Shown: positions 23,964 through 62,304, numbered from the stretch's first letter. The stretch: DNA of 64,000 nt from Lepidodermella squamata (GCA_047495785.1 JBLDXI010000049.1:1-64000); one strand, 5' to 3'. Translations and numbers: made by a program. Notes: generated by a model from the letters alone, not told the origin.

Positions 23964-24368
23964 TTATTTCCCGCTGAATTTCTGGTCGTTTTGGTTGAAT
24001 GCTCGCAGGCTGTCCATTAGCGCCAGGGCGGTGAGTCGCTTTTCCATACGATCGGAAACATCGTCACTTTCATCGCCGTCGAAGCTGTCGAAATTAGTTT
24101 CGTAGGAGCGCTTGCGACGCGTTTCGAGGCTAGAATCGTCCGAATCTAGGTCAGCTGAGCGTTTTCGCGATTCACCGCTGAAATCATCCGAGCTGAACCG
24201 CTTTTCCCTGTATAGAAAGAAATATTAATTTTTTTTACATTGCACGAAATTTAAAACTTACGCGTCCTCGTCATCAACGGATTCTTCTTCAAAAATCGGA
24301 GCAGCGGCGGCGAAAACAGCAAGAGCTATAACGCCGAGGAGCAGAATTGCGATCTTTTTGCATGCCAT
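23964..24368 (-). CDS. Neuropeptide-type precursor; exons 24368-24262, 24207-23964
   Basis: MACKKIAILLLGVIALAVFAAAA signal; acidic spacers cut by KR/RKR/RRKR; C-terminal KR-LTALALMDSLRAFNQNDQKFS-GK-stop (amidation signal); phase-2 intron. Confidence 0.85.
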
Positions 24369-24435
24369 TTCAAGTAAAAATCAGTAAAAATTCGTAAACT
24401 TCTAGTAAAATTTTGCAATGTTCTGAATAAAGCGA

Positions 24436-24443
24436 TGACGTCA
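24436..24443. promoter_or_regulatory. Perfect CRE palindrome (TGACGTCA) ~70 bp upstream of the peptide precursor ATG
   Basis: Exact 8-mer match; function is inferred. Confidence 0.4.
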
Positions 24444-26806
24444 AGAGGCGTTAAAATCACAACTGACCTATAGCTACGCGAGATAAAACTACGAAAACAG
24501 CGCAAAATATTTGGTATAGCGATGAATATTTATATTTGCGAGTGATGCGCCATGGCACTAGCCGACGAGATTAAAAAGCGTCGAGTAGGCGGCGGTGCGC
24601 GCGTCGGCTGGTGGTCGGTGGTGGTGGTGGTGCGGATGACGAAAAAAGCGCCGTACTCTTGTTATTATTAATGTTTGGCGAAATTGCGCACAATTTCTTG
24701 ATTAATCCACCGCAATAAAAAAGTGCGCGCGATTTATTACCTGTGAGCGCGCGCAATAAAAAAAAAGCGCCGAAGAAGCGACCGGAAAAAACAATGAGTC
24801 AGTTTCATATTATCAGAAAGTATTGCGGACAAAAAGTCAAGAGAAAAATGATACCGGTAAGACTTCGGTCCCCCTTCATTCTTGACTTGCCTAAATGAAG
24901 TGCTAAATGATGCCTAATGGATTTAAATTCTTTGAAAAAACATAGAGAACGTATGATCAAGATACTTTTTTTTACTATTAAAATAGTTGCACCCTGCAGA
25001 CAGGCGGTTCGTAATTTTCATCGCCACCAGCTATTGGTGTCTGTTATTCCTATTTTAGAAGAAATGCTCAACTATTGTCACCTCGCAAATATGGAAAGTG
25101 GGAGACCACATTGTTTGTGAGCTCTCGCGATACTGATGATGTGTTGATGGTTGCCGTGCATCACAAGTGGGAGGACCCTCTAAAACGTTCGCGTCGCTTC
25201 CCCTCACACCTCACGCGGAACCCCGCAGCCCGCAGTCTCTATCGCGAAATTTCGCGTATTTATTATTCCCGATATTTACCTCGATTTTCGAATTTTGTTT
25301 GAAATTCTCAAAATGTCTGCGTCTTAGCTGCAATTATGCAAACATGCGTAATAAGTGTAATAAATTTTTCATTGCGAAAAATCTCATACGTCCCAACTTT
25401 CATCTTTGGCTAGATGACAGCAATGAGGAAAAGTTCACAGGGTATGCGCCTCTTGTACGTTGGCAATATCGCGCGATGTTGCCGCAGTTGACCCACATTT
25501 TTAAGAATTTTTTGCACGCGCCAGATGAATATATTTTATTTTATTGGCAATAAAATACATATCTCTTGGCACTACGTCTAGGCATTAGGAAGATTCACCA
25601 GCTGATGGGAAGAGTTCGAATAAGGGGGCTGAAGGCGTGGCGGATTTGAAAAATTACAAAATTATTGGGTGATGACTCGTCTTATAGCCAAGCTTTTACG
25701 AAACATTTCTTATACTACCCTCAAGATAGGGGCGGTAGCAATCATATAATTAGATTTAAATCATGAAAGTACGCTAAAAAAAACGTGGAATTCAAGAAGA
25801 GACAATTTTAATTTTGAAAATTGTTGGCACGTGCGATGAAACTTGACATCATAGGAGACATGGCGATTATGGTGAATTTGATTTATTTTAGGTAAAATTA
25901 ATCTGAGTAGGAGCACCGCCTACGTTCAAGGTTATACGCGATTTTATTTAATTTAAGAAAAATCCTGGGGATAACAACTCATATTGGACGTAAGAACGAA
26001 GGAAAGTTGGGAAAAGTCTCGTCGTTACGCTCGAACACTCGGTACCAAAATGTTTAAAATTGTCGAAAAATTGGGAAAAAATTCGCAATGTTCAGAATTA
26101 AGGCGGGTTTTAATTCATGAAAAACATCGATTTCCAAAGTTTTGGCACTATATTCGAAATTTCGCCTGCGTGCAATAAATAAAGGATGACTGTAGTCGCT
26201 AATCACAAAAATCATCGCATGATAAATAATTTATTGTAAATTTGAGATGATTCACAAAAAATGTGAAATTATTACTCCTCAGTTGTTTTGAAAAAAAATC
26301 GTCGGCGTTTAGCTTGAGGCGCTACTTACAGGCTTTATACATAAGGCTACGGACATTTCTTAATTATGAGATCGTAAAACCTAGATTAATCTGTGTCACA
26401 TGAATCCGGTTTACGGAAAGTCGGGGCACGTAACATTTTACTAGCGACTTGGAACCGCTAACGGAAATTGTTAGAAAACAGCCTGAATTTCCCGTTGATT
26501 CGGATTTCCCGGCAGGAGTTTCGCTGCACCGCAGATGGAGGGCGTTTCACTGAATTAAAAAAAATTAGCCAGTTGACTGATAAATTTCATTAACAAAAAT
26601 TTAATATTAAATTGTATGATCTTAGTTTATAGAAGAGTACCGAGACCTTGTCGTCTTCAAAGCGAACATTAATAAAAAGCAAGTGACGCAGATCTACGTC
26701 ACATGGCCCAAGGGCTTAGAGGGTATTTTCATCCGGCACTTTTGAAAAATAACTGTTACTTAGCAAAGTCAATACTAATAATCGAGTTTATTTTAAAAAC
26801 AGTATA

Positions 26807-26986
26807 CAGGGTGGCCGAAAAATTCCGCAAAGCGGGAATTCGTTGCGCATCAATTTAATGAGGAGTTTTAAGAAGTCGAAGAATTTCAAGCATTCTTTTG
26901 CCAATGGAACTCCTAAATTTCTTGAAAATCCTCATTAAAATGATGCGCATCGAATTCCCGCTTTGTGGAATTTTTTGGCCACCCTG
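26807..26986. mobile_element. Tc1/mariner-type MITE with TA target-site duplication
   Basis: TA|CAGGGTGGCCGAAAAATTCCGCAAAGCGGGAATTCG ... CGAATTCCCGCTTTGTGGAATTTTTTGGCCACCCTG|TA. Confidence 0.9.
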
Positions 26987-27718
26987 TAGGTTCAATTTAG
27001 CTGCTTCGAATCTATATAATAGGGCATCCAACAACAAAGCAAAACCAATGCTACGCGATAAGCTAAAAATTGAAGAAATCACGATTTTTTTCAAATTCGC
27101 GTGCTCTTTTTTTGGATTTTTTTGCCGGTGACAGACACTTTTGAGTCACGAAGAAAATCGGAGGACTGGAAAATCCATAATTTTTTAATTAGCTCATATA
27201 TTCAGAACAGTGTTTACTATGTGAAATTTCAACTTGTGTCCTATGGGAATCAGATGACAGGATTCAGACTCCAGACTAATAGAGATCCAGAATATTAAGA
27301 TACAAGGCATTTTTGGACCATAGTCGAGCTATAGATCACTCTTAATTGGAAGCATCTAATTTTTGCTCAACATCCCCAACTGAATTTTAGTACGGTGTCT
27401 TACGCGGCATGATTATAATAGGACACTACTGTGTCATACAAGTCAGAAGGTTTGGGAACGAATGCATCTGTTGAAAAGTGTAATCGTGAGAGAAAAAAAC
27501 AATTTTGCGCCTATCAATCAGGTTTCAAACCTTCATCCGACTAAAATCTGTGATGTAAAAAGGTTGCGCAACTCATGGGTCATGGGGCACGCTTCAGATT
27601 CGGCTAAAAATCAACACTTTCAGTTGACTCTATCTCAGCTGAATTGAGGCGTTCTCTGGAAAATGAACATTCAACCGGTTGAGCTTTATTTCTAATATAG
27701 CGAATAGCTTTATTGAAA

Positions 27719-28117
27719 TCAAAGTTTTCGGTTTAAAATGTCCTGCTGCCTGTCTAATTTCAATTTGTGCTGAATCTTTAATTTGACGATGTCATTATTC
27801 AGAAGCCTGTTCCTACCAATGATGGCTCCCGGAACTGGCCTCGGATCTTGGATAACTGCGATCGGTTGATTGTTGATAGTACCATTAGTAGTGATAGTCG
27901 AATTGTTAGAATTTTCGAGAAATTTTGTGAATTTCGCCCGATTGCGCCACCAAGGATACATCACAACTTGCGTTATATACCTCCTTTTCCTGAAAAATTA
28001 TAAAAAATTGTAATTTATAGGTTTGTTTACAGAAAAAACTTACTCGATTTGATGCGACGGCTCGCAAAATATTGACGAGGCGATTAAGAAGAGCAAACAA
28101 ATCGTATGAATTTTCAT
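27719..28117 (-). CDS. Secreted prepropeptide, YITQxVMYPW family member A1; exons 28117-28044, 27989-27719
   Basis: MKIHTICLLFLIASSIFCEPSHQIE|KRRYITQVVMYPWWRNRAKF...; phase-2 intron. Confidence 0.8.
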
Positions 28118-28180
28118 TTTTTAAATATATCTACAAAATTATAAATCAAATTTTTAATTTTTGTCAAAACTGTTACTTTA

Positions 28181-28687
28181 TTATATTTTTTGCAGCTGTT
28201 TAATTTTAAGCAATTCAAACGCCCGAAGAAGAGCTGCTTTACTTTTGAGCCCTGTCTTGGCTACATTTTCAGCCGAGTTGTTCGGCCGAAGTAAGTTCAG
28301 CTTTACAGCGATTTTCCGAGGCTTGCCTCCACTGATCGATTGCACGAATTGGCTAGCATCGCCGGTTTTGGCTAGACTCGACAGATCCACGGCTTGATCG
28401 CTCGACCAGCGATGTGGAACCGCCCGGTATTTCCTCTTCCTTAAAATTCAAATGCTATTCATTTCAAAAATGTTGAGAAAAATCACTTACTCCAAGGCTA
28501 AACTTTCGCCCGAATAATCAGCGCTGAAATCGTTATTACTATGCTGGAAATTATTTTCGCCCGGTTTCACGATGCCATAATTTGAATATGCATAGTTATT
28601 CGGCCGAAATATATTTCCAAGACCGGCAGTCTTCAAAAAGCCGGCGCTTGGCTCGACTAAAGTGAAAATCAATATAAATGCCAGCAT
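28181..28687 (-). CDS. Secreted prepropeptide, VPHRW family member B1; exons 28687-28491, 28439-28181
   Basis: MLAFILIFTLVEPSAG...SLALE|KRKYRAVPHRWSSDQAVDL...LNLLRP; phase-2 intron. Confidence 0.85.
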
Positions 28688-28939
28688 CACTTTGATTTCT
28701 CGAAAAAACTGAAAAGCTGAAATTTTGTTTGTCGCCGGTCAGCCTGAAGCTAGGGCGTTTTTATAGGCGGATGACACTAATAGGTGCACCGTATTTTTTG
28801 CGATTAAATTATCATGATGATGTGACCTGGAAATTTTTCTCCCTCTGTGTGTGATTTTAATCGATAAAAAAAGCAGTTGTTTATAGGTCCGGGCAATTTT
28901 TACTACAACAGATATCATCAACATAAGATTTTAGACAGG

Positions 28940-29306
28940 TCAACTATGATGATTAATAATATTTTTTTTCATCGGCCGCTTTTTCGCTAAAACGATAGAT
29001 TGCTGGAAGGTGCTGGGCGAACCGACGCGTAGGCGGCCTTGTACCAAAGAAGCTCCTTTATTTTTCATCACCAGCTGGCTTAAATTAGCCTGAAATTTCG
29101 ACGACTCGGGTTGATCACCGGCGCCTCGCCACGGATACATTACAGCTTGAGTAATATAACGCCGTTTTCTATAATAATTATATAATTTTTTCAGATTTCC
29201 CGAAATTTTTCAAAATTTCTCACACAAAAGTTGGAATATGCGCCGACGAGTCGATGACCATTGCCGAGGCGAGAAAAGCAAAACAAAAATATTTGATCAA
29301 ATCCAT
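28940..29306 (-). CDS. Secreted prepropeptide, YITQxVMYPW family member A2; exons 29306-29224, 29168-28940
   Basis: MDLIKYFCFAFLASAMVIDSSAHIPTFV|KRRYITQAVMYPWRGAG...; phase-2 intron. Confidence 0.8.
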
Positions 29307-29359
29307 CGGTTAATTTTAAAATTATTCTAAAAATAAATCATAAAACGTAAATTATTTTT

Positions 29360-29983
29360 TTATTTGACTCGAACACTTGGAAAATATTGTCCCTTATTAG
29401 TGCGTGATGGATAGCGGCTATTCGGAGCTACCCAAATGGTTCTAGCCGAGTTCCGAGGACGAAGCAAGTTCAAGTCAGATTTCTCCTTCTGATTTATCCG
29501 ATGCTTCAAGCCGCCGCTGGGTGAAGCCGGGCGCTGCGAGGCATGCGAACCCAAAAATCGGTTTGAATTGCTTTTCTTGTTGTAATTGGCCAGGTCCATG
29601 CCTTGATCGCTCATCCAACGATGCGGGACATATTTTCGCTTCCTTAAATTTTCTTTCGAAGATCAATATATTGAAAAATTTACCTCATAATACGGTCTCC
29701 GGCCGGGACCGGTTTACTATGAAATAACAAGATTTCGGAATTTTTCGAGCATTATTTTCCAGATATTATCTTACTAGAACTGAGCGAATTCATTGCTGTG
29801 GAAATGCTCGTTAGATTCCTCACCCACCATTGATTGGAAGCTATTTTCACCCGGTTTAACGATGCCATAATTCGAGAATAAATATTTATTCGGGCCGAAT
29901 ATACTGTTAAAATTGCCGGCCTGCAAAAAACCGGCACTTTGCCCGGCTAAAGCGATTAACAATAAAATAGTAATTACGCTCAT
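29360..29983 (-). CDS. Secreted prepropeptide, VPHRW family member B2; exons 29983-29775, 29716-29684, 29642-29360
   Basis: MSVITILLLIALAGQSAG...FAQFY|KPVPAGDRIMR|KRKYVPHRWMSDQGMDL...LNLLRP; two phase-2 introns. Confidence 0.8.
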
Positions 29984-30822
29984 ATTCGACGCTTTTTTTA
30001 CAATGGCCAATACAATATTTAGAGGTCATAATTGAGATAATAATTAAAATGATTAATTTTTGAAAATAATTTCCCACGGGGATGATAGTTTGCATTTTAT
30101 TACCCTAGTGTATTCGACGCGACGCAATTTCACGCATTTCAGGTCAGTAAAGCCCGCGATATAATATAATATTGAGTGCTGAAAAATCGTGACTATTTTT
30201 CAGAGAGATAATTAGTGCACAATTATTTAATTGACCAGTTGACGGAACGTGGGCTTGCAAAAAATCATATTTGACATTTCGGAGGAAGCGTATATCAATA
30301 ATGGGAATAAATATCGTCTCATTAGTTGTTGTTTTAATATAAATTTCATCTACCTGGGATCGCCTATGTAAATTGTCCGCGCTATTTGTCCGCATTGCGT
30401 ATTTTCCCCTTGCCAAAACTGTTACGCCCGGCCGGTCCGGTGGCACTTGAAAAGTTTCACTGAATCACATCCGGTTGGGATAGCACGCTATTTGCTATTT
30501 TTAAAACCGCAGCCACTTTTTGCCGGATATTTTGCGACGCTTGATGACCTCATTAAATTTATGAATCACAAAAAAAATTGGAATAAAAATTGCGTGGAGG
30601 GCAGTGAAAAAATTTCCCACCAATGCGGACTTTTCTTATAATTCAGACCAATTTCAGCGGCTCGAACGGTTTTATCAGGTTGAACACCAGACTTCAACCA
30701 GGCTGTTGTCAATTTCGATAGATTATCAACATTAGGGTTCTGAAAAATTGAATTCAAAGAAAAAATATGCGAATTTTAAAAGAAAACGCTCAGCAATTAT
30801 TTGCTATTTTTTCGTCGGTTTA

Positions 30823-31325
30823 TTACATTTTACGTGGTTGCCTAATTCTAAGCAGTTCGAATGCTCTAAGAACCGCTTTATTTTTACACGGCGTATTACG
30901 TCCTGTTGTAGCTACGTTTTCAACCGAGTTCTTCGGTCGAAGTAAGTTCAGCATAACAGGTACTCCTATTCTTCGAGGATTGCCACCATTGCTGGTTGAA
31001 GATGATATCGAATGCACGAATTGGTTCGCATCGCCGGACTTGGCTTGCCTCGACAGATCAACCGCTTGATCGCTAGACCAGCGATGCGGAACCGCTCGAT
31101 ATTTTCTTTTCCTTAAAAATCAAATGCGATTAATTTCTGAAAAATTTCGAGGAAAATCACTTACTTTAAGACATAGCTTTCGGGCGACTGATCAACGCTG
31201 GGTTGGAATTCTATGAGAAAACTTTCACCCGATTTAATGATGTCGTAACTGCCAGGAAAATCGCCAGTCTTTGAAAGACCGGCGCTTCGCTCGGCAAAAG
31301 CGAAGATTAAAATGAACGCTAGCAT
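30823..31325 (-). CDS. Secreted prepropeptide, VPHRW family member B3; exons 31325-31165, 31111-30823
   Basis: MLAFILIFAFAERSAG...SYVLK|KRKYRAVPHRWSSDQAVDL; phase-2 intron. Confidence 0.85.
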
Positions 31326-31954
31326 AATTTTGATTTCTCGAAATACCAAGCTGAACATATTTCAGGATCGTTGACGGCGGTCAGCGAGGCCGGGCGTTTA
31401 TATCGGCTAGCAGCGGATGACACTCATAAGTGCACAAATACTTTGCTGCAAAATTGAGTGCAAAAAAAATTAATTAAAACCGATGCTATTTTAAATTAAT
31501 GCATATTTAATTAATTGACCAGTTGAGGGGAGGTGGGTTATTGGACGAAATTATGTTTTACATTTGGTAAAAGCGTAGGAATAATAATGTTTTTTTCTGT
31601 TTAAATGCCTTGCCACTGTAAAAAGAAACATGCTTTTTGACCCGTTTTATAGGTATTCCCTCGATATTATGGTGGCATAATAAATGATTTGCATTGTAAT
31701 TTAATTAAGGTAACCCGTCACCTGAACGGGGTCATAGTCTCATGCCTTTGTAAACAGATAATAAGCGCGATAATTAGCATCATAATTGATACAAAATCAA
31801 ACTGTTGCTATGGTGGGGATGATTAACTATCTCGGTAGGAATCTTCAAGAAACGATAAAAACAAGTTGATTAGAGAAATAACCGCTTCGGAGACACCCGC
31901 TTTTAACGCAAGTGAGCGCGCGCGAGGCCGTTCGTAGTTCCGTCATGTTGAACT

Positions 31955-32170
31955 TCCTTACTAAGGGTGCCTTAGTAAGCAATCGGGACGTTCATCCTTG
32001 CTACGCTTAGTAAGGATTGCCCATACTTACTGCCGCCGCATGCTTACTAAGGAAACCCTTACTAAGGATAGCCTTTACTTCATTAAGGTGACCCTTACTA
32101 AGGGTAGCTTACTAAAGAAGCCCTTACTAAGGATAGCTGGCTTAGTAAGGAGACCATTACTAAGGATGAA
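31955..32170. repeat. Minisatellite/foldback array of CTTACTAAGG in both orientations
   Basis: About 10 degenerate copies of (C)CTTACTAAGG or CTTAGTAAG with short variable spacers. Confidence 0.8.
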
Positions 32171-32186
32171 GGAGAGTTAAGCAATA

Positions 32187-33205
32187 TCATTCGCGCGCGC
32201 GTTCGATCGATTTGCGTCGACAGAGAATTGAGCGATCCATATGCTCGCAATTGAGCTGTTCCAACGTTGGCAACTCGACCAGTGTCGCTTCGCAACAGTT
32301 CAGAAAAGATTCAGGTTTCGAAGTGATTTCAAACCTGTCCGTCCTATGAAGTCCCCAGGGCCTGCCGCTCAGATCAAGGCTCAAAGCTTCTTCGGCCGAG
32401 TGTTCGGGTAACAATTCTTGACGTAGTGATCATTGGCCGTTAGCGATCTATAGACCGCATTGAACCTGGTCATGGGACGCATCCTACCTGCTCAGGTATA
32501 AGCCTCTTTACCTGTTTTTTTCGATCCACACCTGTCCAGGTGATGCCGATGGAAAAATAAAAGGCACCATCGCAATCAGCGCCATTTGTTACGTTATATA
32601 ACAAATCTTCACAGCTGTCAGATATAACAAATGGGGTCCCAAATCCATGCACCCTTTTTACATGGTAAAAACTGAAATTAGCAGCAAAAGTTGGCAGCAC
32701 GCCAACGGAAGGTGATGCAAATGTAATTTTTGTTTCTATCAACTAGCATTGGTCCATAACAAATAATGAGACTTCTCGGAGTATTGGAAGTTAGTGCTGA
32801 TGAAAACCCGCTGCTAGGTTCCGTTAGGTATCTATAGCTGCCATTGTCCATTTTCCATGCAAGTAACCCTTGTTTTCAGTAACATGTTTGGGTTTCGGAT
32901 AAAATAAGACATTGATCAGATTGGCCAGCCACGCCTTTATTTTCGATAACAACTTTATCTATCTTTATCAAGTCTTGTAATGCTTTGGCGAATATTGACT
33001 CATCCAATTGAGAGTGATTGTTTGATACCAACATTGTGAATCGTTCGTGGCGCGGAAGAAACAGCACTTCAAGTGCTAATGATAGGATATTTTTTTGCTT
33101 GAAGTGCTGCGGTTCTTCCGCGCCACGAACGTGATGATATTCGTAAAATTCAATTTTACATGAAAATTCTGGAGATGAACCCCAACATAACGACGATGCA
33201 TCCAT
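32187..33205 (-). pseudogene. Possible decayed coding sequence of unknown family
   Basis: Successive protein-like ORF fragments (32876-33205, 32470-32742, 32187-32414) broken by stops and frameshifts, with no clear splice sites. Confidence 0.3.
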
Positions 33206-35752: not shown

Positions 35753-36266
35753 TTATTCGATTTTTTGCGGCTGTTTAATTCTAAGCAGTTCAAATGCTCG
35801 ATGGAGAACTGCTTTACTTTTACACGGCGTATTCAGCCCTGTCGTCGCCACGTTTTCAACTGAGTTCTTCGGCCGAAGTAGGTTCAGCATTACAGGCAAT
35901 GCGATTTTCCGAGGCTTGCCACCGTTGCTGGTTGAAGATGATATCGAATGCACGAATAGGCTTGCATCGCCGGTTTTGGCTTGACTCGACAGATCCACAG
36001 CTTGATCGCTCGACCAGCGATGCGGAACCGCTCGATATTTTCTTTTCCTTGAAATTCAAATTCAAATTAATTTCCGAATAATTCGAGTATTAAATGACTT
36101 ACTCTAAGACATAGCTTTCGGGGAATAAATCGTTGAGACTATTTTCACCCCATTTCATGATGTCGTAATTTGAGTTTGAATTTTGATACTTATTCCGAAG
36201 AAATGTACTGCTTGAAATTCCGGCGCTCTGCTCGGCAAGAGCGAGGATCAAAAGAAATGCCAGCAT
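35753..36266 (-). CDS. Secreted prepropeptide, VPHRW family member B4; exons 36266-36103, 36047-35753
   Basis: MLAFLLILALAEQSAG...SYVLE|KRKYRAVPHRWSSDQAVDL; phase-2 intron; close paralog of B3, including the upstream flank. Confidence 0.85.
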
Positions 36267-38032
36267 AACTTTGATTTTTCGACAAACTGAACAGAAAATA
36301 TTTCAGAATTTTTTTTGCCGGTGGTCAGCGAAGCCTGGGCGTTTTTATAGGCTAACAGCGGATGACACTCATAAGTGCACCAATTTTTTTCCCGCGATCA
36401 ATTAATTCAAATTTGAGTGCAGAAAACATGGAAAATATTTTTTAGAGGTTGAAAATTGATGCATATACGGAAGGTGGGTTATACGACATGTTTGACATTG
36501 GTGAAAGCATATGAATAATAATGTTTTTGATCATTCCGTTTCATTGTCTCTTACGTCCACTGTGAAAAGAAAAACATGTTTTTGACCCGTTTTTTATTCC
36601 CTCGATATTATGGTGGCATAATAAATGAATTGCATTGCCGTTTAATTAAGGTGACAATAAACGGGGTCAAACTGGCGGCGGGCATTTATGGCGTACAGAC
36701 AATAAAAAACAGGCTGATTGGAAGCAATAATCGATTTTCAGAGAAAGGTTAAAAACAGGATTTCTCTTTGGGATCCCATCTTATTAATCTTAAAATATAA
36801 ACGAATGAATGTGGGCATTTTGTACGTCCTGAAATCGAAGAAATTAGTCGGCAGGGTATCTACCTGATTATTAGGTGAAATATCGGGTAATTTTTGAAAG
36901 TATAAATATGCCACTTTAATTATAAGAGGAATTTCAATTCGCGGTTCATTAAAAAATGACTTGCATACATAGGCGAATGACTTGCAGGGCAAAACTACTA
37001 AAAATTGCCAAATTTGCAATTAAATACAAATTAAATTTGCAAATACTACCAGAAATCCGATGCTTACTTTCGTTATTCGAATCGTGCAGTCCAAATTTCG
37101 CGATTCAATCGTGATTAACAACAATTCGTGCGCATCAAAATGCCGCATTGGACACAGAAACCACGGTTAAACAATACCGTGGGGTAAATTGGCCGTAAAA
37201 GTCGCCGTCAGGTCGATTGCACATCGACAAAAACCTTTTTCACGAACTTTTTTCCGAACTTCCTTGCCACCTGAGCTGCACATAAGACTAAATCGCCATA
37301 CAAAACTCGCTCAATCACCGAGCCAAAAATCGGGCAGACGTGATTCATATTTTGAAACTCAAATTCGGCTAGCTGCCTGTTATCAAGTTGAGCTAAAAAT
37401 TAAAAACGTCTTGATGTTCAAGGAAGTGGTGTTTTTCGCTATTATTTGAAAACGATCAAAACCATGCCTGAAAACTGAATTTAGACTCATGCAATCGAAT
37501 CAGCGCACTAAAATACCTCTAGAGCTAGTCGTAGATGATAGCATTATATAGACAGTTATCGATTATCGATTATCGTGATTGAATTCTTCGATTCGCGTGA
37601 TGATTGGTAAAACTTCATGGTGATTTTTGAGTTCCTCGCATTAAGCAAACGTATTCCACCTGAAATCGGCAAAATTATCGCAATATTATTGATTATCGAT
37701 TATCGATCAAAATCAATATCGTCTGATTGACACTAAAATTATATCGATGGAACTGATCCAGGGGATCTCGAAAATCAAACATCATTAGTTGTCTGATTTT
37801 ATTTGAGTGAGTTGCGGCCATTTCAATATTTTTAGCCCGAGATGACATTTTCGTAGCCGCGAAATCTAATCAACTCAAATTGAAATTATTTCGAGATTTT
37901 CCATTACATACTAGGTTCTCCTTAAACATTGCAAGTTGAACATTCAAGCCGAGTCGTCTCAATCAAGTTAAAAGGCGCTATCAATTTCCGAAGACAACGT
38001 CAGACCTATAACAATTTTGCATTTGAAACAAA

Positions 38033-41000: not shown

Positions 41001-41041
41001 ATTTTAAACACCAAATAAAACCGTCGCACAAATCGCAATAA
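38033..41041 (+). CDS. Class C GPCR, GABA-B-receptor-like; exons 38033-38369, 38837-39655, 39837-41041
   Basis: Signal peptide; flytrap motif VNSKAEFLPDYHIELKVKD; GHPPKD linker; 7TM with WLITDP, YCASDNQLKW and NYEC. Phase-1 introns keep the frame. Confidence 0.85.
38396..38812. mobile_element. MITE in intron 1 of the class C GPCR
   Basis: Sub-terminal inverted repeats GGTTCCAGCATTAA..TGTGAGA / TCTCACA..TTAATGCTGGAACC; homologous to 42882-43262. Confidence 0.75.
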
Positions 41042-41049
41042 AATTACCG

Positions 41050-41235: not shown

Positions 41236-41371
41236 AAATTATGGGGCGATTCTTGGAATCCTATGGGGATTCGTCTAAAAAACCGCGTATTTATTGAAAC
41301 TTTTCACTCTTTTCCAAGCTGAACGAATTGGTACATTTCACTAAAATATAAGTGTATCTTAATATTGCACT

Positions 41372-41908: not shown

Positions 41909-42358
41909 TCAATAATATCCAGATTGCTTTTTACTCTTGTTCTTATCGCCGAATCTGAAAGTCCGGCCTGGTAGTACTACTCTTGACCTGGGCGTCGAAG
42001 TCGATGGAATGGGGGTGAATAGGACGTAAGCCGTCTGTTTAGGGTTCGGGACACGGTTTCCGGCTCTCATAAGGCGGCTTTTGACATCGACGAACTTCAT
42101 TTTAACCTCGGCCGATTCAGAGCCGCCTGCGGGGATAACGCGCCATTCGTTAGTTTTAGAACCGCGGCCAATTTTTGCGGAAATCCCGCGACGCTTGATG
42201 ACCGTATCAAATCTATAAATAATCATGATAATAAAATATAATCTCTCGAAAAAATTATAGGATTTTTACCGATTTTCCACCGATATTCGACCCATGACTT
42301 CGGGGAAAAGAGAGCCGGCGAGCGCGATAAGGCATAATACCAAATTCAAGCCCTGCAT
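41909..42358 (-). CDS. Secreted basic prepropeptide; exons 42358-42270, 42212-41909
   Basis: MQGLNLVLCLIALAGSLFPEVMGRISVENR|FDTVIKRRGISAKIGRG...; phase-2 intron. Confidence 0.75.
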
Positions 42359-43540: not shown

Positions 43541-43882
43541 TCAATTCCCAGCGTTATCCGTCATGTAGCTTAGGGTTCGGATCGGATTTCGCCTCGGTGT
43601 AGGCCGAATAGCCTGCCTTGATTTAGCGAATTGGTTCTTCTTCAAAGAATCACGAATCATCTCCCGCCAAGCTGACACCGCAACGTCATCGTCATCGCTA
43701 TTAGCAAATCGATTTGAAGAACCTGCTGATGTGGACCTATACGAACCTCTTAAAATCGGTGTAATTTTAAGAAAAAATGGTGTAAAAATAAGTGCTTCTT
43801 ACCTTGACAACGGAACGTCGGCTACAGCGTCAGCAATTTGCACCGAAATTAACGAAAAACAAACCACTGCTGCAATCAACAT
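43541..43882 (-). CDS. Small secreted peptide precursor; exons 43882-43803, 43748-43541
   Basis: MLIAAVVCFSLISVQIADA signal; phase-2 intron; ...DDDDVAVSAWREMIRDSLKKNQFAKSRQAIRPTPRRNPIRTLSYMTDNAGN. Confidence 0.65.
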
Positions 43883-45332
43883 ATTGATTAATTTAAATTT
43901 ATATGTCCCTCTAAAATCTAAAATAGGTAAATGAAAACATTTGTGGTTTAGCTTTTACCTTGTCCCAATCAATCAAACGCATCTCTTGGGATTTACCTAA
44001 AAATGCGATGAATATTGAGAACCTGAATATAAATGACTGCTAGTATTGATATTATCGAAACAATTCTACAACAATTTACATTAATTTATTTAGCCTCCCG
44101 CAACTCGATGACTAATAACCGCAGCAGGAAGCGAACTTTCATTCCGCATAATTGATTCCGCAATTATTGAGTTCACGAACATCGCACCCAATAAAAGAAA
44201 TTTAATGAAAGGAAAAAAGATATCCTGTTTGCTCATGCTGACTGGGGTAATATCCCGAAAGAATTTTCGGAATTTTCGATTCGAGTTATTTTTATACTCC
44301 CTTATACAGGAAATCCAACTGCTTCATTTAAGGATTAAGGAAGCTCATTTGAAAATTTGCCGTCGAAAATAGGGCACGCTGCCAATCTGCGGAAAATACA
44401 AAAGAATAGAAGAAGAAGAAGATCGTATTTATTTTTCATACTCAACAATGAACGGCTCATCTCTCAATTGTTCTTCTTATTTTAGATAATATAGGCATCC
44501 ATTTCCGGTTGATTACAGCGCACGTTTTGCCGTGCATAGATTATTACTCTTAATCAAGTGATTTTTCCGGCGCGCATTCATAAAAATCGATAAAAAATCG
44601 AGATGAATCATCTCGGCACACGTGTCACTCTCACATATATCTATGAATATTATAATGACTTTTATCGCTTATTTATCGCAAAAAGAGCGAAAGACGAACA
44701 CTATTGATTATAATTATAGTCCGTTATTTAAAACGTCCGCTTGCGTTCAAAGTCCAGCGCAGTCCGTGGATACCCACATTCGTACGATTTTTTCGAATTT
44801 TAACTCTGTTTTACACCGTACATGAGGCTATTCTCAATTATCGGACATGTCCCATATGAACTGCGGTGCACAGCGATCATGTGAGGAGGACTGGGAATTT
44901 AATTTCTCTTCGCTGCCATGATAAAAAGGCGCGGAAGAAATCTTTGAAAAATCGGACAAAACTGCAAATTATTGTTCAAAAATTGTCAAAGGATCAATGG
45001 CAGACGTTCATTGATCGAGACGTTTAGTCGCTTAGACAATAAAATTGTCTGTTCAAGTTTTGCTTTCACTAACAATGCGAGTTTGATCGATTCTGTCCGA
45101 AATCGCGAAATCGCGAAATCGGGAGCACTTTTTCGTTTTAAAGAGCACGAGCTATTTTTTCCTCTTTTCAACTTAACTTTTATTCTTTTCTAACACTATT
45201 CAATAAAATAACATACTGGCACTAAGCCAACTAAATTAACATAGCATTACCTGCTACTCCCAAACAGTTTCTAAACCTAGGAAGCCGGGCCTAACCTAGC
45301 TTCTTCCCCCCTATTTTATTCTAGAAGCCCTG

Positions 45333-49759: not shown

Positions 49760-50446
49760 CGCTCCAACTACATTGAACGTTTTTACATTGCGAATTCTAA
49801 TAGACAGCAACGAATGGCATGATACCACTTCTACCCTCATTTTATATATTTTTACACTACATACATGATTGTTTTGATACATTTTACTCGTTATGAGGCT
49901 CGAGTCAACGCGCCGAGAGCGTCTATGACGGATGGTGGTACAAATAAAATCCTTCACATGCCAAAGATCGGTCGAAAACGTATGGTCTCAGGCTTTTTAT
50001 TGAGTGTCACCCTTATGCATAATTTGTCGCGCAAGAGAAACTGGGTGATGGGTGCTATGCAATTGACATATTGGATAGGTATATGGGCGGTTTTTGCGAC
50101 GAAGTTTAACACGACTGATCTGAAAATAGAAAATGAACTAAGTATACGTTGCGGTGACTCCGAGCATGTCTCCCAATTAGGGTCAGGTAAAGGACTTCAG
50201 TGGTGCTGCGGAAGTTCGTGATTTCCCAAATTTTTCCTCGGATCTTTAAAAGCAGATTCAATTTACTGCAAGCTGAATTGACCGAGTTTTCAATAATTAT
50301 AAAATCGTGAGAAATTTTTGAGAAAAATGCAAATCAATTATCATAAAAAATTATGAATTATTTTCAGTATGTTATGAGGTCATAGAAATTAAAAAATTAC
50401 ACTTTATTTTCCATGAATTTTCGTCACACTTAAAATCACTACCAGG

Positions 50447-50761
50447 CTAAACTGGCCATGAGCCCATGCGATTGAAATCCAACCGAAGTTTCAAGCCTAT
50501 TGGCTGTTTGGATTCAACGAGAGGACTAATTGATTCGATCGATGGTTCTGCAATCGATTTCGGCTTATTAGAACGGCCATATGATTTGAACAGAGACCAA
50601 TACCGGCTCGACCCATCGTTGTAAATCGGCTCGACCGATGACATTGCCGCCTTCTTTCGACTTGGCGGTATGTCGAAAGCCGGGCCGAATCTGAGAGGTG
50701 ATGCGGAAATTTCGGCTAATAAAATTGCAAAAATCAAGAATATGACAGTAGTGAATTTCAT
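50447..50761 (-). CDS. Intronless secreted peptide precursor (candidate YWSLFKSY-amide)
   Basis: MKFTTVIFLIFAILLAEISA signal; RKK site and R-YWSLFKSY-GR; TATA-like element upstream. Confidence 0.75.
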   Translation of the reverse strand: MKFTTVIFLIFAILLAEISASPLRFGPAFDIPPSRKKAAMSSVEPIYNDGSSRYWSLFKSYGRSNKPKSIAEPSIESISPLVESKQPIGLKLRLDFNRMGSWPV

Positions 50762-51061: not shown

Positions 51062-51415
51062 TCAGCCTAGCACGCGCGAGACTCGATATCGATTAGGATT
51101 TCTGTTTTTCGGCCGGCGCTTTTCAACTGATTTTCGACTGATCGCCGATTTTTCGCGCATTTTGTCACGAAAATATCGCATCAAAGCCGTTCGCTCGGCT
51201 TTACTCCACACCAGCGATCTTTTGCTAGAAAATTATTAAAAAGTTAACAAAAAATTACTGATTATTTTTGCTCACTAAAGCCGACGGTATAAGTAAGGCT
51301 GGTTTTCATCGTCGAGTTGAAACGGCCATGAACGGTGAAAGCCCATCAAAATGCATTCAATCAGGCCTAACTGAGCCACAAAAACTACGGCGAGAAGGAT
51401 TAAACCCGTCTTCAT
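51062..51415 (-). CDS. Secreted prepropeptide; exons 51415-51276, 51224-51062
   Basis: MKTGLILLAVVFVAQLGLIEC...RRLY|KR-SLVWSKAERTALMRYFRDKMREKSAISRKSVE-KR-RPKNRNPNRYRVSRVL-G-stop; phase-2 intron. Confidence 0.8.
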
Positions 51416-51616: not shown

Positions 51617-51917
51617 ATGCGTTTCTTTGTTGCTCTCAATTTTTTTATGCTTTTCCTGACTTTGATCAATGTTGCCGCTGGAGATCCGATAGCAAACGCC
51701 GATGACTACGACTACTTCGATGTTGGAATAAAGTAATTCGTTTTTCATCAGCGAATTTCGTGTTATTTTTAGTAATTTTTTTCTCAGTTCGAATGATATG
51801 AAAGAATTGGACCCGAACACACAGACGTTTGCTGTCGATTGCAATGACGAATCGCCGGATGAGGTGAAAGAAGTCCGTCCTTACCTGCCGGCAATGCGCG
51901 GTGAAACGGCTGTGTAA
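51617..51917 (+). CDS. Small secreted acidic peptide; exons 51617-51732, 51788-51917
   Basis: MRFFVALNFFMLFLTLINVAAG signal, then DPIANADDYDYFDVGIN|SNDMKE...RPYLPAMRGETAV; phase-2 intron; AATAAA downstream. Confidence 0.7.
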
Positions 51918-59618: not shown

Positions 59619-60196
59619 TTAGTTTCCGACCAGAGCGTCGCGCATAGCTTTGTTATTTGTCGCAAACCACTGCCGTTTGCCGACGCTTGACGACGTTTGC
59701 CGACGTTTGCCGACGTCTGCAACGGCTCCAGCTCTCGGGTCGTAGTAGCTCATTGGCAGGAACCTTTTATGGAACTTTTCGCCGAAAAATTCCGGATCCC
59801 TGTTAACGAGAAAATTCGAGAAAATTTGATATTTATTTTAGTCAAAATGGAAAGCAAGGCATCAAGTGATAAAAATATTTTATTAATTAGGAGTTATTTT
59901 TCAAAACTTTTTAAATCTTTCATTTGACACGGTCTGAATAAATCGAAGAAATCAGCTGCACTGGCTTGGCAAAATCAATAAAAAATCAATTAATCTCCTT
60001 GAGATACATTTTGCAATATCAAATTTTTGGCCAAGCTTCTCTAATTTTTCTGGCAATTCTCACATTTTTTAAATATTTTAGGGAGTGATCTTTAATCTCA
60101 CCTTTCCTCGAGTTCATCCAGCATGTCGAAAGCTTGAATAATCTGGCTAGGCAAGAGAATGGCAACGACGAATAGGCAAAATATAGCTGATTTCAT
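59619..60196 (-). CDS. Neuropeptide-type precursor with GKR sites; exons 60196-60102, 59799-59619
   Basis: MKSAIFCLFVVAILLPSQIIQA-FDMLDELEER|DPEFFGEKFH-KR-FLPMSYYDPRAGAVADV-GKR-RQTSSSV-GKR-QWFATNNKAMRDALVGN; phase-2 intron. Confidence 0.85.
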
Positions 60197-61451
60197 CTTG
60201 GAGAAAAAATTTCCTACGATATGTGGTGATACAAGTGATAAAGAAAGCAAAAATTGTGGGCGGTTATTTAGCAAGATGCTTCTATATTTATACTAGGGCT
60301 ATTTTTATAAGGAGCTTACAATTGCATGTTGCATTATTGTAATTACAATTCGCAAGTAGAGTGTCGCATATGCCAATTTTCACGCGAATTTAATTGGTGA
60401 AAATCGAAACCCGCAATTCAACGCCGCAGCTCCGGGGCACATGCACGAAATAACCTTATGCCGCAGGGGATAGACGATAGGCTGGTTGGTACAAGGTACT
60501 AGGACACATTAGCTCAACATATTAGCCTAAAATCTAGAACTTGACGTCACAGCCGCTCATGACCGTTAACAAGTGAAAAATGGGGTTTGGCGAAATTTTA
60601 GACAACGGGAGATTTTGATGCCACTGTCGAGATCAATTATCGAGAAGTCGAACAATATAAAAAATTGATTGATAGCTATTGAGGTTGAAGAGAAAATGGT
60701 CTTCAAAGCTTACTATATTAGCAAAAAATGCGACTTTTGATGAATGCGCGCTTAAAAACAAATTGAGGTTTTTATTGCATCAACTGATAATCCCCCACGC
60801 AATAATTCCGATGTCATTTACTTTTCGCGACATATTTTAGGGTAATCTGAGATGAGGAATTTCGCTGGATATTCGAAAAGTAGGAGGAAGCAAGCTATTC
60901 GGAAGCGAAACTGTGGTGTTTCCAGTCTTCTAAAAGGAGAATGAGAGCAGAGCCGAGGTCTGAAATTTTAAATTTTTAAAATCCCCACCAAGACAAACTG
61001 AGTGAGAACCACTTTTCATTTGTTAACACGGTCATATATAAATATTTTGTAGGTCACGCCCATTCAAATTTTTGAGATCGTAAGAAAATTGAGGTTGAAG
61101 GACAAAAATCAGTTTTTGCCCGAAATTACCATCAGAGAGTCATTACAGAGATATTAGGGGTTCCCAAAACGAAGCCCGAAGTCGCGCTGCATTCAACTTT
61201 TTCCGAAAATCGATTTTCGATCCAAAAAGGCTATATAATGAGACAGAGAATTTTATGCAAAATGTGTCCCAGATCATGTCCTCATTACGGAGATGATAAA
61301 AAAAAATAATAAATGTCTCAATCTGTAATTTTATTTATGATAAAAAGTATAATTTGCTAATTAGTTTATTAAAGTTAATTATAATTTTATAAGCAAGACT
61401 TTTTAAGTGTTAAAGTTGCGACTGTAGACATTAGCATTAGATGTCCCATTT

Positions 61452-61753
61452 TCAATCAAATTGCTTATGAAGAGATGCGGCCAGTCCAGGTGACCAACGT
61501 CGCTTGGCCGTGCCGATATGGGGTCTACTGCCGTAAAGAGCAGCTGGGTAAAACCGTTTAAAAGTCTCGCCAAAGAGCTCAGGTGTACTGTAGTGGTAAA
61601 ATAATGTATTATTTCCTTCCAAATGAGTGAATTTTTTCAATATGAAGTTTCTTACCGTTCATTGAGTTCGTTCTCAACAAAATCGAAGCCATATACCAAA
61701 TTAGCCGGCAGAAGGGCCGCAATGAAAAGGACGCAAAATAAGGTGGATTTCAT
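61452..61753 (-). CDS. Neuropeptide-type precursor, paralog of 59619-60196; exons 61753-61656, 61587-61452
   Basis: MKSTLFCVLFIAALLPANLVYG-FDFVENELNER|TPELFGETF-KR-FYPAALYGSRPHIGTA-KR-RWSPGLAASLHKQFD; phase-2 intron. Confidence 0.85.
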
Positions 61754-61953
61754 GTTTTTTTCGATGATTTTTTAAATTTTATGGCGGAAATAACTCGGGC
61801 TCGAGGATGACACTCTTTGCGTGATTCCAAAAAAGGTTTTTCCAAGTTAAAACAAGCGAAGCATAATTTTATTCTCATAAACTGTCAAAGACATAATTCA
61901 ATTGAAAATCATGATTTTTTCGCCGCGTGATGATTAATTAATATAGACAAATT

Positions 61954-62304
61954 TTAGCCGATTTTCTGCCGAAAGCCGACCGGCTGCACGCGAACTTGGT
62001 ACGGGTTGTAGCGTTTTTGGACGAGCCAAAGTGGTGCCGGAATTTCCTCATCATCGTCACCGTCGTCACTGATATCATTAGTATTCGCCTCATCGTCTTC
62101 GAAACTGAAATTTTTTGAAAATAAATAATTTTTTTTCTAAAGTTTTTGAATTACTAACATTGCTGGTCGATCTCTAACTATTTGCAGATTTTCATCGTCA
62201 GACTCGTCCGTATCGCCGAACGCAACGTTCCAAGCCAGGGTGATTTCGATGGCGCAAAACAGTGCCAGGAGAAAAATCGAAAGATACAGAGAAAATCTAG
62301 CCAT
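61954..62304 (-). CDS. Prepropeptide with an acidic propiece and an amidated C-terminal peptide; exons 62304-62159, 62104-61954
   Basis: MARFSLYLSIFLLALFCAIEITLA signal; D/E-rich pro region; KR-YNPYQVRVQPVGFRQKI-G-stop; phase-2 intron. Confidence 0.85.

What the first reader, a model, noticed from the sequence alone, without database searches (positions are those of the whole stretch)
23964..62304. Hidden cluster of ~15 small prepropeptide genes sharing a phase-2 intron: a candidate new secreted-peptide superfamily
Seen in sequence: manual splicing gives 15 short genes with signal peptides (ATGs at 24368, 28117, 28687, 29306, 29983, 31325, 36266, 42358, 43882, 50761, 51415, 51617, 60196, 61753, 62304), 14 of them on the minus strand. 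Most carry KR/GKR sites and several end in an amidation Gly. All 14 intron-containing genes have only phase-2 coding introns, and in 8 the intron lies within one residue of a KR. Established: dibasic sites and a C-terminal Gly are prohormone convertase and PAM signals, and phase 2 is generally the least common intron phase in animals. Inference: uniform phase across sequence-divergent groups points to one ancestral gene that diversified in situ, as in pheromone, toxin, antimicrobial or lineage-specific neuropeptide arrays. I recognise none of the mature peptides. Divergent orphan GPCRs in the same window could be cognate receptors, but that is speculative.
Basis: partly seen in the sequence, partly recalled or inferred. 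Interest (0 to 1): 0.9.

Follow-up and report, generated by a model that had tools for sequence, protein, structure and literature searches.

The report
Cluster of fifteen orphan secreted-peptide genes
A 38-kb stretch of an unidentified small-intron animal genome holds 15 real, unannotated genes for short secreted peptide precursors that look like neuropeptide or hormone genes, match nothing in public protein collections, and all carry the same unusual intron phase, which hints at, but does not prove, a common origin.

Summary
All 15 ATGs exist. Each opens a signal-peptide-like N-terminus. Fourteen genes have short phase-2 introns (41-68 nt, one of 302 nt) and one gene is intronless.

The genes are real. 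A second, mirrored copy of the region on contig C26 is about 5% diverged. It keeps all 15 reading frames and every GT..AG pair. Intron lengths drift by non-multiples of three, while the coding exons carry a single in-frame indel. Pooled dN/dS is 0.135. One run that appears to be RNA covers only exons of three genes and contains one exact predicted splice junction.

By sequence the 15 genes form three small families plus seven singletons. They have no Pfam match and no relative among 5.8 billion (word-indexed search) or 1.84 billion (profile search) proteins.

The peptide exon is twice as conserved as the signal/pro exon. That favours signalling ligands over toxins or antimicrobial peptides.

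A single ancestral gene is plausible but unproven, because no cross-group sequence homology was found. The scan has noted similar clusters elsewhere in this genome, some with other intron phases. A genome-wide phase background could not be measured.

The parts
23964..24368 (-). g24368. Exons 24368-24262 and 24207-23964, with a 54-nt phase-2 intron. The 116-aa precursor has acidic spacers, KR/RKR/RRKR sites, and a C-terminal 21-mer followed by GK (amidation signal).
   Evidence: Identical protein in the C26 copy. A CRE palindrome (TGACGTCA) 66 nt upstream is conserved in C26. Only two copies in the genome.
27719..28117 (-). g28117 (family B). Exons 28117-28044 and 27989-27719, with a 54-nt phase-2 intron. 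The junction reads E|KRRYITQVVMYPW.
   Evidence: Paralogues on C26:950k and C42 keep the same phase-2 junction. No cover in run X1.
28181..28687 (-). g28687 (family A). Exons 28687-28491 and 28439-28181, with a 51-nt phase-2 intron. The junction reads E|KRKYRAVPHRW.
   Evidence: X1 contigs lie on its exons and one piece ends exactly at 28491. The peptide exon is identical in C26, against 7 changes in exon 1.
28940..29306 (-). g29306 (family B). Exons 29306-29224 and 29168-28940, with a 55-nt phase-2 intron. The junction reads V|KRRYITQAVMYPW.
29360..29983 (-). g29983 (family A, three exons). Exons 29983-29775, 29716-29684 (a 33-nt micro-exon) and 29642-29360. Two phase-2 introns of 58 and 41 nt.
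   Evidence: The X1 loose end at 29683 carries 16 nt identical to 29626-29641, so the 41-nt intron is spliced out. Another X1 piece ends exactly at 29775.
30823..31325 (-). g31325 (family A). Exons 31325-31165 and 31111-30823, with a 53-nt phase-2 intron.
   Evidence: the one in-frame 3-nt indel relative to C26. X1 cover at 30886-31251.
35753..36266 (-). g36266 (family A). Exons 36266-36103 and 36047-35753, with a 55-nt phase-2 intron.
41909..42358 (-). g42358 (singleton). Exons 42358-42270 and 42212-41909, with a 57-nt phase-2 intron. 130 aa, with a KRR site six residues after the junction.
   Evidence: Relative to C26 it has 14 synonymous and 6 non-synonymous changes; 5 of the 6 amino-acid changes lie in exon 1. 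Only two copies in the genome.
43541..43882 (-). g43882 (singleton). Exons 43882-43803 and 43748-43541, with a 54-nt phase-2 intron. 95 aa, with no KR.
   Evidence: Relative to C26 it has 12 synonymous changes and 1 non-synonymous change.
50447..50761 (-). g50761 (singleton). Intronless, 104 aa, with a signal peptide and an RKK site.
   Evidence: Relative to C26 it has 6 synonymous changes and 1 non-synonymous change. Its nearest language-model clusters are assorted neuropeptide preprohormones at 0.83-0.89, a lead only.
51062..51415 (-). g51415 (singleton). Exons 51415-51276 and 51224-51062, with a 51-nt phase-2 intron. The junction reads Y|KR, and the C-terminal 16-mer ends in Gly (amidation signal).
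   Evidence: Relative to C26 it has 10 synonymous changes and 1 non-synonymous change. Only two copies in the genome.
51617..51917 (+). g51617 (singleton, the only plus-strand gene). Exons 51617-51732 and 51788-51917, with a 55-nt phase-2 intron. 81 aa, acidic, with no dibasic site. It is the weakest candidate for a processed peptide.
   Evidence: Relative to C26 it has 5 synonymous changes and 1 non-synonymous change.
59619..60196 (-). g60196 (family C). Exons 60196-60102 and 59799-59619, with a 302-nt phase-2 intron. It has KR, GKRR and GKR sites that would yield two amidated peptides.
   Evidence: The intron is 277 nt in C26 with the frame kept. An upstream CRE is conserved. Only two copies in the genome.
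61452..61753 (-). g61753 (family C). Exons 61753-61656 and 61587-61452, with a 68-nt phase-2 intron. It has KR and KRR sites.
   Evidence: BLASTP against g60196 gives E 1.5e-15.
61954..62304 (-). g62304 (singleton). Exons 62304-62159 and 62104-61954, with a 54-nt phase-2 intron. It has an acidic spacer, then KR, then a 17-mer ending in Gly (amidation signal).
   Evidence: Relative to C26 it has 12 synonymous and 4 non-synonymous changes, none in the final peptide. Only two copies in the genome.

Best explanation
The region is a tandem cluster of 15 genuine, selectively constrained, lineage-restricted genes. Each encodes a small secreted precursor of 77-174 aa.

The usual gene has two exons. 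The first encodes the signal peptide and a variable pro-region. A very short phase-2 intron follows. The second exon encodes the conserved peptide part, often starting right at a KR cleavage site.

Proposed mechanism (inferred):
- The precursors enter the secretory pathway.
- Furin/prohormone-convertase-type enzymes cut them at dibasic sites.
- In at least four genes a copper monooxygenase amidates the C-terminus.
- The products act as intercellular signalling peptides of the neuropeptide or hormone type.

Proposed origin (inferred): the cluster grew by tandem duplication of a two-exon gene with a phase-2 intron, followed by fast divergence. This left only three recognisable small families (A, B, C) and seven singletons.

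Shown here: the genes are real and under purifying selection, the splice architecture holds, they are orphans, and the processing enzymes are present in the genome. Inferred: the processing itself, the signalling function and the common ancestry.
For: Reality of the genes:
- All 15 open reading frames and all GT..AG pairs are preserved in the roughly 5%-diverged C26 copy.
- Intron lengths change by non-multiples of three (41 to 49, 54 to 58, 302 to 277), while the coding exons carry one in-frame indel, against 477 gap columns in 7.2 kb of flanks.
- Pooled dN is 0.014, dS is 0.10 and dN/dS is 0.135.

Expression:
- Contigs of run X1 lie only on exons of g28687, g29983 and g31325.
- Two pieces end exactly at predicted exon ends.
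- One contig carries the exact g29983 exon-exon junction.

Precursor features: signal-like N-termini, dibasic sites, acidic spacers and C-terminal Gly or GKR.

Processing machinery in the genome: about 10 proprotein-convertase P-domains and 39 PHM/DBH-type monooxygenase domains, the best at E 2e-39. There are also more than 166 Cys-loop receptor exons, which indicates an animal with neurons.

Ligand-like selection: the peptide exon differs at 2.5% of residues between the two copies and the signal/pro exon at 5.4%, p = 0.003.

Class-level lead: g50761 sits nearest to assorted neuropeptide preprohormone clusters.

Tandem origin:
- 14 of 15 genes are co-oriented.
- The intron is phase 2 in all nine sequence-independent groups. 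If phase 2 has a background of 0.25-0.33 (my assumed background range for animal introns, not measured in this genome), the chance is about 4e-6 to 5e-5.
- The phase-agnostic scan finds no phase-0 or phase-1 members.
- Dispersed paralogues of A and B keep the same junction.
Against: - No peptide has been detected and no tissue of expression is known.
- Run X1 is only guessed to be RNA, is stored as short contigs with odd strand-switch joints, and covers 3 of the 5 genes tested.
- No significant sequence similarity links the groups.
- Exon 1 length (74-209 nt) and the position of the intron relative to cleavage sites both vary.
- g43882 and g51617 lack dibasic sites.
- The conserved parts of families A and B are 75-100 aa long, which is long for classical neuropeptides.
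- The genome-wide phase background for small secreted genes was not measured.
- Scan notes report the same architecture elsewhere in the genome. The shared phase may therefore reflect a genome-wide gene class rather than local descent.
Confidence: 0.6

Rival explanations
1. The genes are real secreted-peptide precursors but are not one family. In this reading several unrelated precursor lineages share the signal/pro exon, phase-2 intron and peptide exon layout because that layout is a genome-wide cassette class. It could have spread by exon shuffling, or be favoured because same-phase cassettes stay in frame when recombined. The genes then merely accumulated in this region.
For: There is no cross-group sequence homology. 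Unchecked scan notes describe the same phase-2 pro/mature boundary at other places in this genome (s1-410381, s1-407789). Because every intron is phase 2, any exon 1 joined to any downstream exon 2 stays in frame; one search shows examples such as exon 1 of 28687 joined to exon 2 of 28117. The singletons have no paralogues anywhere.
Against: The genes are tightly clustered and 14 of 15 are co-oriented. The A-B adjacency was duplicated as a unit to two other loci, which shows that local tandem duplication operates here. No chimeric gene sharing an exon 1 with one family and an exon 2 with another was seen.
Confidence: 0.3
2. The peptides are not neuro-endocrine signals. They are defensive, antimicrobial, pheromonal or secreted gland products.
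For: Tandem arrays of small orphan secreted genes are typical of immune and venom effectors (general knowledge). The conserved parts of families A and B are long, basic and end in amphipathic-looking stretches. The model shows no confident fold. No expression site is known.
Against: The mature part is more conserved than the signal/pro part, and dN/dS is low. That is the opposite of the conserved-signal, hypervariable-mature pattern of toxin and antimicrobial superfamilies. There is no cysteine framework. Most genes are single-copy rather than expanded. Amidation signals, acidic spacers and conserved CRE elements fit neuropeptide genes.
Confidence: 0.2
3. The models are chance open reading frames or decayed pseudogenes, an artefact of manual splicing.
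For: No annotation or public gene call supports them. Only one splice junction is directly seen.
Against: All frames and splice sites are preserved across 5% divergence, with dN/dS of 0.135 and indels excluded from the coding sequence. The scanner gives 0 models on reversed controls. X1 cover is restricted to exons.
Confidence: 0.02

Closest known systems
Animal neuropeptide and peptide-hormone precursors processed by prohormone convertases and PAM (generic class)
   Same: Signal peptide, dibasic KR/RKR/GKR sites, acidic spacers, a C-terminal Gly as amide donor, small precursors, and bioactive parts that are more conserved than the pro-regions. Convertase and PHM-type domains are present in the genome.
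   Different: No sequence match to any curated family, or to any protein in the collections searched. Most precursors would give one peptide, or a few different peptides, rather than repeated copies. The conserved parts of families A and B are 75-100 aa.
Tandem arrays of small secreted-peptide genes in compact genomes, such as nematode nlp/cnc clusters (from general knowledge, not tested here)
   Same: Co-oriented arrays of tiny signal-peptide genes with very short introns, produced by local duplication.
   Different: As far as I know, those clusters contain recognisably similar Gly/Tyr-rich antimicrobial-type peptides. Here the neighbours are mostly unalignable, and they carry cleavage and amidation signals.
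Secretory-cassette superfamilies: frog preprodermaseptins and cone-snail toxin superfamilies (from general knowledge)
   Same: A two- or three-exon layout with the signal/pro part on one exon and the KR plus active peptide on the next, with intron phase conserved across very different mature peptides.
   Different: In those superfamilies the signal/pro cassette is the conserved part and the mature peptide is hypervariable. Here the reverse holds, signal peptides are not alignable between groups, and there are no Cys frameworks.
Use of intron phase and position as evidence for neuropeptide-precursor homology (for example phoenixin; PMC9004410)
   Same: A shared intron phase at a comparable position is taken as support for common descent.
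   Different: In that work, gene structure supports homology together with clear sequence conservation. Here the sequence support across groups is missing.
Melanocortin core (HFRW), raised by another first-reader note on family A
   Same: Family A peptides begin KYRAVPHRW, which contains an HRW triplet.
   Different: Only three residues are shared. There is no POMC-like architecture and no Pfam hit. I treat the resemblance as coincidental.

Membership tests
Convertase/PAM-processed secreted peptide precursors (functional class) | N-terminal signal peptide | tested here: met
   All 15 have an uncharged hydrophobic core (9-residue Kyte-Doolittle mean 2.4-3.7) within the first 20 residues. This is a heuristic test; SignalP was not available.
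Convertase/PAM-processed secreted peptide precursors (functional class) | Dibasic (KR/RR/RKR) cleavage sites flanking the conserved peptide | tested here: met
   Present in 12-13 of 15 genes and absent in g43882 and g51617. The sites are conserved in the C26 copy.
Convertase/PAM-processed secreted peptide precursors (functional class) | C-terminal Gly, or G-K/R, as amidation signal | tested here: met
   Present in g24368 (..SGK), g51415 (..LG), g62304 (..IG) and g60196 (two GKR sites), that is four genes only.
Convertase/PAM-processed secreted peptide precursors (functional class) | Processing enzymes encoded in the same genome | tested here: met
   P_proprotein domain: 10 matches, best E 2.7e-27. 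Cu2_monooxygen (PHM/DBH) domain: 39 matches, best E 2.2e-39. Which copy is the true PAM was not resolved.
Convertase/PAM-processed secreted peptide precursors (functional class) | Transcription and correct splicing | tested here: inconclusive
   One exact junction (g29983 intron 2) and exon-only cover of three family-A genes, in a run only guessed to be RNA.
Convertase/PAM-processed secreted peptide precursors (functional class) | Mature peptides detectable, expression in neurons or endocrine cells, receptor activation | not testable with these tools
   Needs peptidomics, in situ or single-cell data, and receptor assays.
Any curated neuropeptide or hormone family (Pfam) | Significant profile match | tested here: not met
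   There are no meaningful Pfam matches for the 14 peptide exons and the intronless protein at E up to 1; the single listed hit is a chance match to Glyco_transf_49 at E 0.22. The language-model neighbours of g50761 are mixed neuropeptide families, all below 0.9.
One gene superfamily (common descent of all 15) | Detectable sequence homology between the groups | tested here: not met
   BLASTP links only members within A, within B and within C. hhalign of A against B gives E 0.023 and probability 2%, although it aligns the junction motif. Between-group scores are 25.4 against 24.4 for shuffles, which composition may explain.
One gene superfamily (common descent of all 15) | Shared intron phase | tested here: met
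   All 15 introns in the 14 intron-bearing genes are phase 2. The phase-agnostic scan finds no other phase.
One gene superfamily (common descent of all 15) | Homologous intron position | tested here: inconclusive
   The intron lies at a KR in eight genes, which make up only 3-4 independent groups. It lies elsewhere in the other groups, and exon 1 is 74-209 nt long.
One gene superfamily (common descent of all 15) | Phase bias exceeds the genome background for small secreted genes | not tested
Only unchecked notes of phase-0 and phase-1 clusters elsewhere are available.
Toxin or antimicrobial-peptide type superfamily | Conserved signal/pro region with a hypervariable, often Cys-rich, mature peptide | tested here: not met
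   The reverse pattern holds: 5.4% differences in signal/pro exons against 2.5% in peptide exons. There is no Cys framework, and dN/dS is 0.135.

The most novel reading that the evidence does not exclude
The uniform phase 2 may be functional as well as historical. It would make every signal/pro exon and every peptide exon of this cluster, and of the similar clusters noted elsewhere in the genome, interchangeable in frame. The locus could then work as a cassette system. New precursors would arise by intron-level recombination. Read-through or alternative splicing between neighbouring co-oriented genes could also produce combinatorial precursors. On this reading, hundreds of sequence-unrelated peptide genes in this animal descend from one two-exon ancestor. 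That would give a direct view of how neuropeptide diversity is generated.
Probability: 0.12. Interest if true: 0.8.

Novelty: new member of a known kind. Interest (0 to 1): 0.55.

Why it matters
Lineage-specific neuropeptides are hard to find because they are short, fast-evolving and split by introns. Here 15 unannotated genes are validated purely by comparing two diverged haplotypes, and the validation yields concrete peptide predictions for mass spectrometry and receptor de-orphanisation.

If the shared phase-2 intron does mark common descent, the cluster would show a peptide-precursor family diverging beyond recognition while keeping its gene architecture. That bears on why no neuropeptide family shows deep homology across animal lineages. 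It would also support using intron phase as a marker of homology where sequence has been lost.

The practical lesson is that ORF-based or homology-based annotation misses this whole gene class in this genome.

Tried and rejected
- Exact look-up of the intronless g50761 product in public gene calls: nothing on record.
- Full-text paper search for six of the peptide strings: 0 papers.
- Word-indexed homology searches of 5.8 billion proteins for family A, g24368 and g42358 peptide exons: blank. A blank says nothing about much shorter or longer relatives.
- Exhaustive profile search of family A against 1.84 billion representatives: 0 hits.
- Pfam on all 15: nothing meaningful.
- AlphaFold2 on the family A peptide exon: pLDDT 54.5, no fold, so no fold search was run.
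- An ad hoc joiner for the neighbouring GPCR introns, meant to give a local phase background: too noisy, discarded.
- The shared promoter 10-mer AGTGTCATCC as a link between families A and C: there are four exact hits, all upstream of peptide-gene ATGs. The g61753 copy is not conserved in C26, so I rejected it as evidence.
- My first IUPAC pattern for that motif was mis-designed and missed it.
- Identifying the animal: the innexin and connexin searches were both blank, but the tool warns that this is uninformative. The organism stays unidentified.
- Suspected pseudogene status of g29983: rejected, because a three-exon model restores the frame, is kept in C26, and has a junction seen in X1.

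Full report
**Observation**

Translating from each gives a hydrophobic, signal-like N-terminus. In 13 cases the first in-frame stop is immediately preceded by a strong GT donor in phase 2.

I enumerated acceptors to obtain coherent models:
- Eleven genes have a single intron of 51-58 nt.
- g61753 has a 68-nt intron and g60196 a 302-nt intron. These two are clear paralogues with the junction at the same place.
- g62304 uses a GTTAGT donor 146 nt into its coding sequence, with a 54-nt intron.
- g50761 is intronless.
- g29983 looked frameshifted at first. It resolves into three exons, with a 33-nt micro-exon flanked by two phase-2 introns of 58 and 41 nt.

Every one of the 15 introns is phase 2. 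Four genes carry Gly amidation signals.

**Are the genes real?**

The window is the first 64 kb of contig C49 of a 121-Mb assembly. A mirrored, colinear copy lies on contig C26 at 92-97% identity. Six of the single-copy gene families I searched for occur exactly twice in the genome, once in each copy. The DNA run X2 shows two variant classes at about half depth each. C49 and C26 are therefore most likely the two haplotypes.

Across this roughly 5% divergence:
- All 15 reading frames are intact.
- All GT..AG pairs are kept.
- Intron lengths differ by non-multiples of three (41/49, 54/58, 51/50, 55/53, 302/277).
- The coding sequence has one in-frame 3-nt indel, against 477 gapped columns in 7.2 kb of flanks.
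- There are 108.5 synonymous and 50.5 non-synonymous differences. This gives dN 0.014, dS 0.10 and dN/dS 0.135.

This is strong evidence for purifying selection on exactly these frames and splice sites, including the weaker-looking candidates g43882 (12 synonymous, 1 non-synonymous), g50761 (6 and 1) and g51617 (5 and 1).

**Expression**

One sequencing-run search and one read-laying run were available. I used both on the five-gene stretch 26.6-32.4 kb.

Run X1 dates from 2015, is only guessed to be RNA, and is held as short Logan contigs. Apart from a high-copy repeat, it covers only the exons of g28687, g29983 and g31325. Two of its pieces end exactly at predicted exon ends, 28491 and 29775. 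A loose end at 29683 carries 16 nt identical to 29626-29641, which is the 41-nt intron of g29983 removed precisely as modelled.

g28117 and g29306 have no cover. Several X1 contigs show unexplained strand-switch joints. Transcription and splicing are therefore directly supported for family A only.

I wrote a scanner that accepts any phase. It requires a signal-like start, an open exon 1, a generic GTxA-type donor, an intron of 40-75 nt, a non-GAG acceptor and at least 20 further codons.

On the window it returns 12 of the 14 intron-bearing genes, all in phase 2. The extra hits are few. The only convincing one is the signal exon of the class-C receptor at 38033. Reversed sequence gives zero models. 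Extending the scan to long introns and intronless ORFs adds no convincing member. The uniformity is real for this window.

**One family or many?**

BLASTP gives three families:
- Family A: 28687, 29983, 31325 and 36266.
- Family B: 28117 and 29306.
- Family C: 60196 and 61753.

The other seven genes are singletons.

Families A and B share a junction motif, E|KR[KR]Y...[HY][RP]W. They sit next to each other, with the B start codon only 53-63 nt after the A stop codon. The A-B pair recurs at C26:948.6-950.7 kb and at C42:4.930 Mb with the same phase-2 junction. The profile comparison is nevertheless weak, at E 0.023 and probability 2%.

Between-group local alignment scores exceed composition-preserving shuffles only marginally, 25.4 against 24.4 with 1 of 200 shuffles reaching the observed value. 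Acidic spacers and KR motifs could explain that excess.

There are thus about nine sequence-independent groups, all in phase 2, or eight if A and B are one group. With a phase-2 background of 0.25-0.33 this has a probability of about 4e-6 to 1e-4. That argues for shared descent or a shared constraint.

The decisive control is the phase distribution of small secreted genes across this genome. Unchecked notes from the scan describe clusters elsewhere in the genome with phase-1 and phase-0 signal exons. They also describe other places with a phase-2 intron at the pro/mature boundary. If these notes hold, phase 2 is not universal in this genome.

**What do the genes do?**

No Pfam family matches any of the 15. 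Three word-indexed searches of 5.8 billion proteins were blank, as was a profile search of 1.84 billion representatives. No paper contains the peptide strings.

Several lines point to signalling peptides:
- The genome encodes about 10 convertase P-domains and 39 PHM/DBH-type monooxygenase domains.
- It has a very large Cys-loop receptor repertoire, so the animal has neurons and the full processing toolkit.
- Between the haplotypes the peptide exon is twice as conserved as the signal/pro exon, 2.5% against 5.4% of residues, p = 0.003. In g62304, g51415, g24368 and g60196 the predicted C-terminal or amidated peptide is invariant.
- This pattern, together with low dN/dS, the lack of Cys frameworks and single-copy status, is what is expected of receptor ligands. 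It is the reverse of toxin and antimicrobial superfamilies.
- A protein language-model search places g50761 nearest to a mixture of neuropeptide preprohormone clusters, all below the 0.9 threshold, so this is a class-level lead only.
- Palindromic CRE elements upstream of g24368 and g60196 are conserved in both copies.
- The family A peptide exon has no confident fold, with pLDDT 54.5.

I therefore favour neuropeptide- or hormone-like signalling peptides at about 0.6. A defensive or pheromonal role is the main functional rival.

**Comparison with known systems**

The genes work like classical convertase/PAM-processed precursors, but they belong to no known family. In architecture they resemble secretory-cassette superfamilies such as preprodermaseptins and conotoxins, with the conservation pattern inverted.

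Intron phase is accepted supporting evidence for precursor homology. In the literature it is used alongside sequence conservation (PMC9004410), and that conservation is lacking here between groups.

The neighbouring receptors are class-A and class-C GPCRs. The class-A receptor I tested is generic, with peptide receptors among its nearest clusters. That is compatible with the cognate-receptor idea but does not test it.

**Verdict**

- The genes are real, constrained and orphan.
- The superfamily interpretation is only partly supported.
- In kind, these are new members of a known class. Similar clusters are frequent in this genome according to the scan's own notes.
- The uniform phase 2 across unalignable neighbours is the unusual and testable element.

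Noticed in passing
window 45333-49759 (+): A LINE-type retrotransposon with two long open frames: ORF1 of 507 aa, and ORF2 of 968 aa carrying endonuclease and reverse-transcriptase domains. It is absent from the C26 copy: window 45102-50255 corresponds to about 320 nt there. It therefore looks like a recent, polymorphic insertion inside the peptide cluster.
   Followed up: partly
window 1-64000 versus G000:C26:775400-832800: Contig C49 mirrors part of C26 at 92-97% identity, with many indels. Six of the single-copy gene families searched occur exactly twice in the genome. C49 is probably an unpurged second haplotype of a very heterozygous individual, with about 5% divergence.
   Followed up: yes
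window 28117-28183 and 29306-29362; upstream of most of the ATGs: Family B genes start only 53-63 nt after the stop codon of the preceding family A gene. Many genes also have a strong acceptor-like site (TTTTTAG or TTTTCAG) 8-30 nt upstream of the ATG. This resembles operon-like spacing with trans-spliced or 5'-UTR-intron starts. X1 covers the A genes but not the B genes.
   Followed up: no
window 28769-28778, 31415-31424, 36360-36369, 61805-61814 (-): The exact 10-mer AGTGTCATCC occurs four times in the window, always 52-103 nt upstream of a peptide-gene ATG. In family A it lies about 25 nt before a TATA box. The copy upstream of g61753 is not conserved in C26, so this is probably a family-A promoter element plus one coincidence.
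   Followed up: yes
window 24436-24443, 60542-60549, 42557-42564, 9214-9221: There are four perfect CRE palindromes (TGACGTCA) where 0.7 are expected. Three lie upstream of peptide genes. Those at g24368 and g60196 are conserved in the C26 copy.
   Followed up: partly
G000:C13:1.99-2.36 Mb and elsewhere: The copper monooxygenase (PHM/DBH-type) domain is greatly expanded: 39 exon matches, most of them in one tandem region of C13 and several with internal stops.
   Followed up: no
L005 (G000:C42:4929212-4932487) and L006 (G000:C26:947129-950407): The dispersed family-A paralogues are decaying or changing. The C42 copy has ACG in place of the start ATG. The C26:948k copy has lost the dibasic site (EKNILVAHRW) while keeping the phase-2 intron.
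   Followed up: partly
window 26794-26987: A short high-copy repeat. Summed contig depth in the DNA run X2 is about 28,600 here, against about 100 elsewhere. X1 contigs also lie on it.
   Followed up: no
window 26600-32400 (run X1): Several X1 contigs join the sense and antisense strands of the same exon ('opposite strands' joints, for example 28491/28578 and 29775/29828). I could not explain this. It may be a library or assembly artefact.
   Followed up: no
window 5525-20453 (-) and 38033-41729 (+): The peptide genes are flanked by, and interleaved with, class-C receptor genes (ANF_receptor plus a weak 7tm_3 match) and several class-A GPCR genes. A tRNA-Phe lies at 16857-16929 (-).
   Followed up: partly
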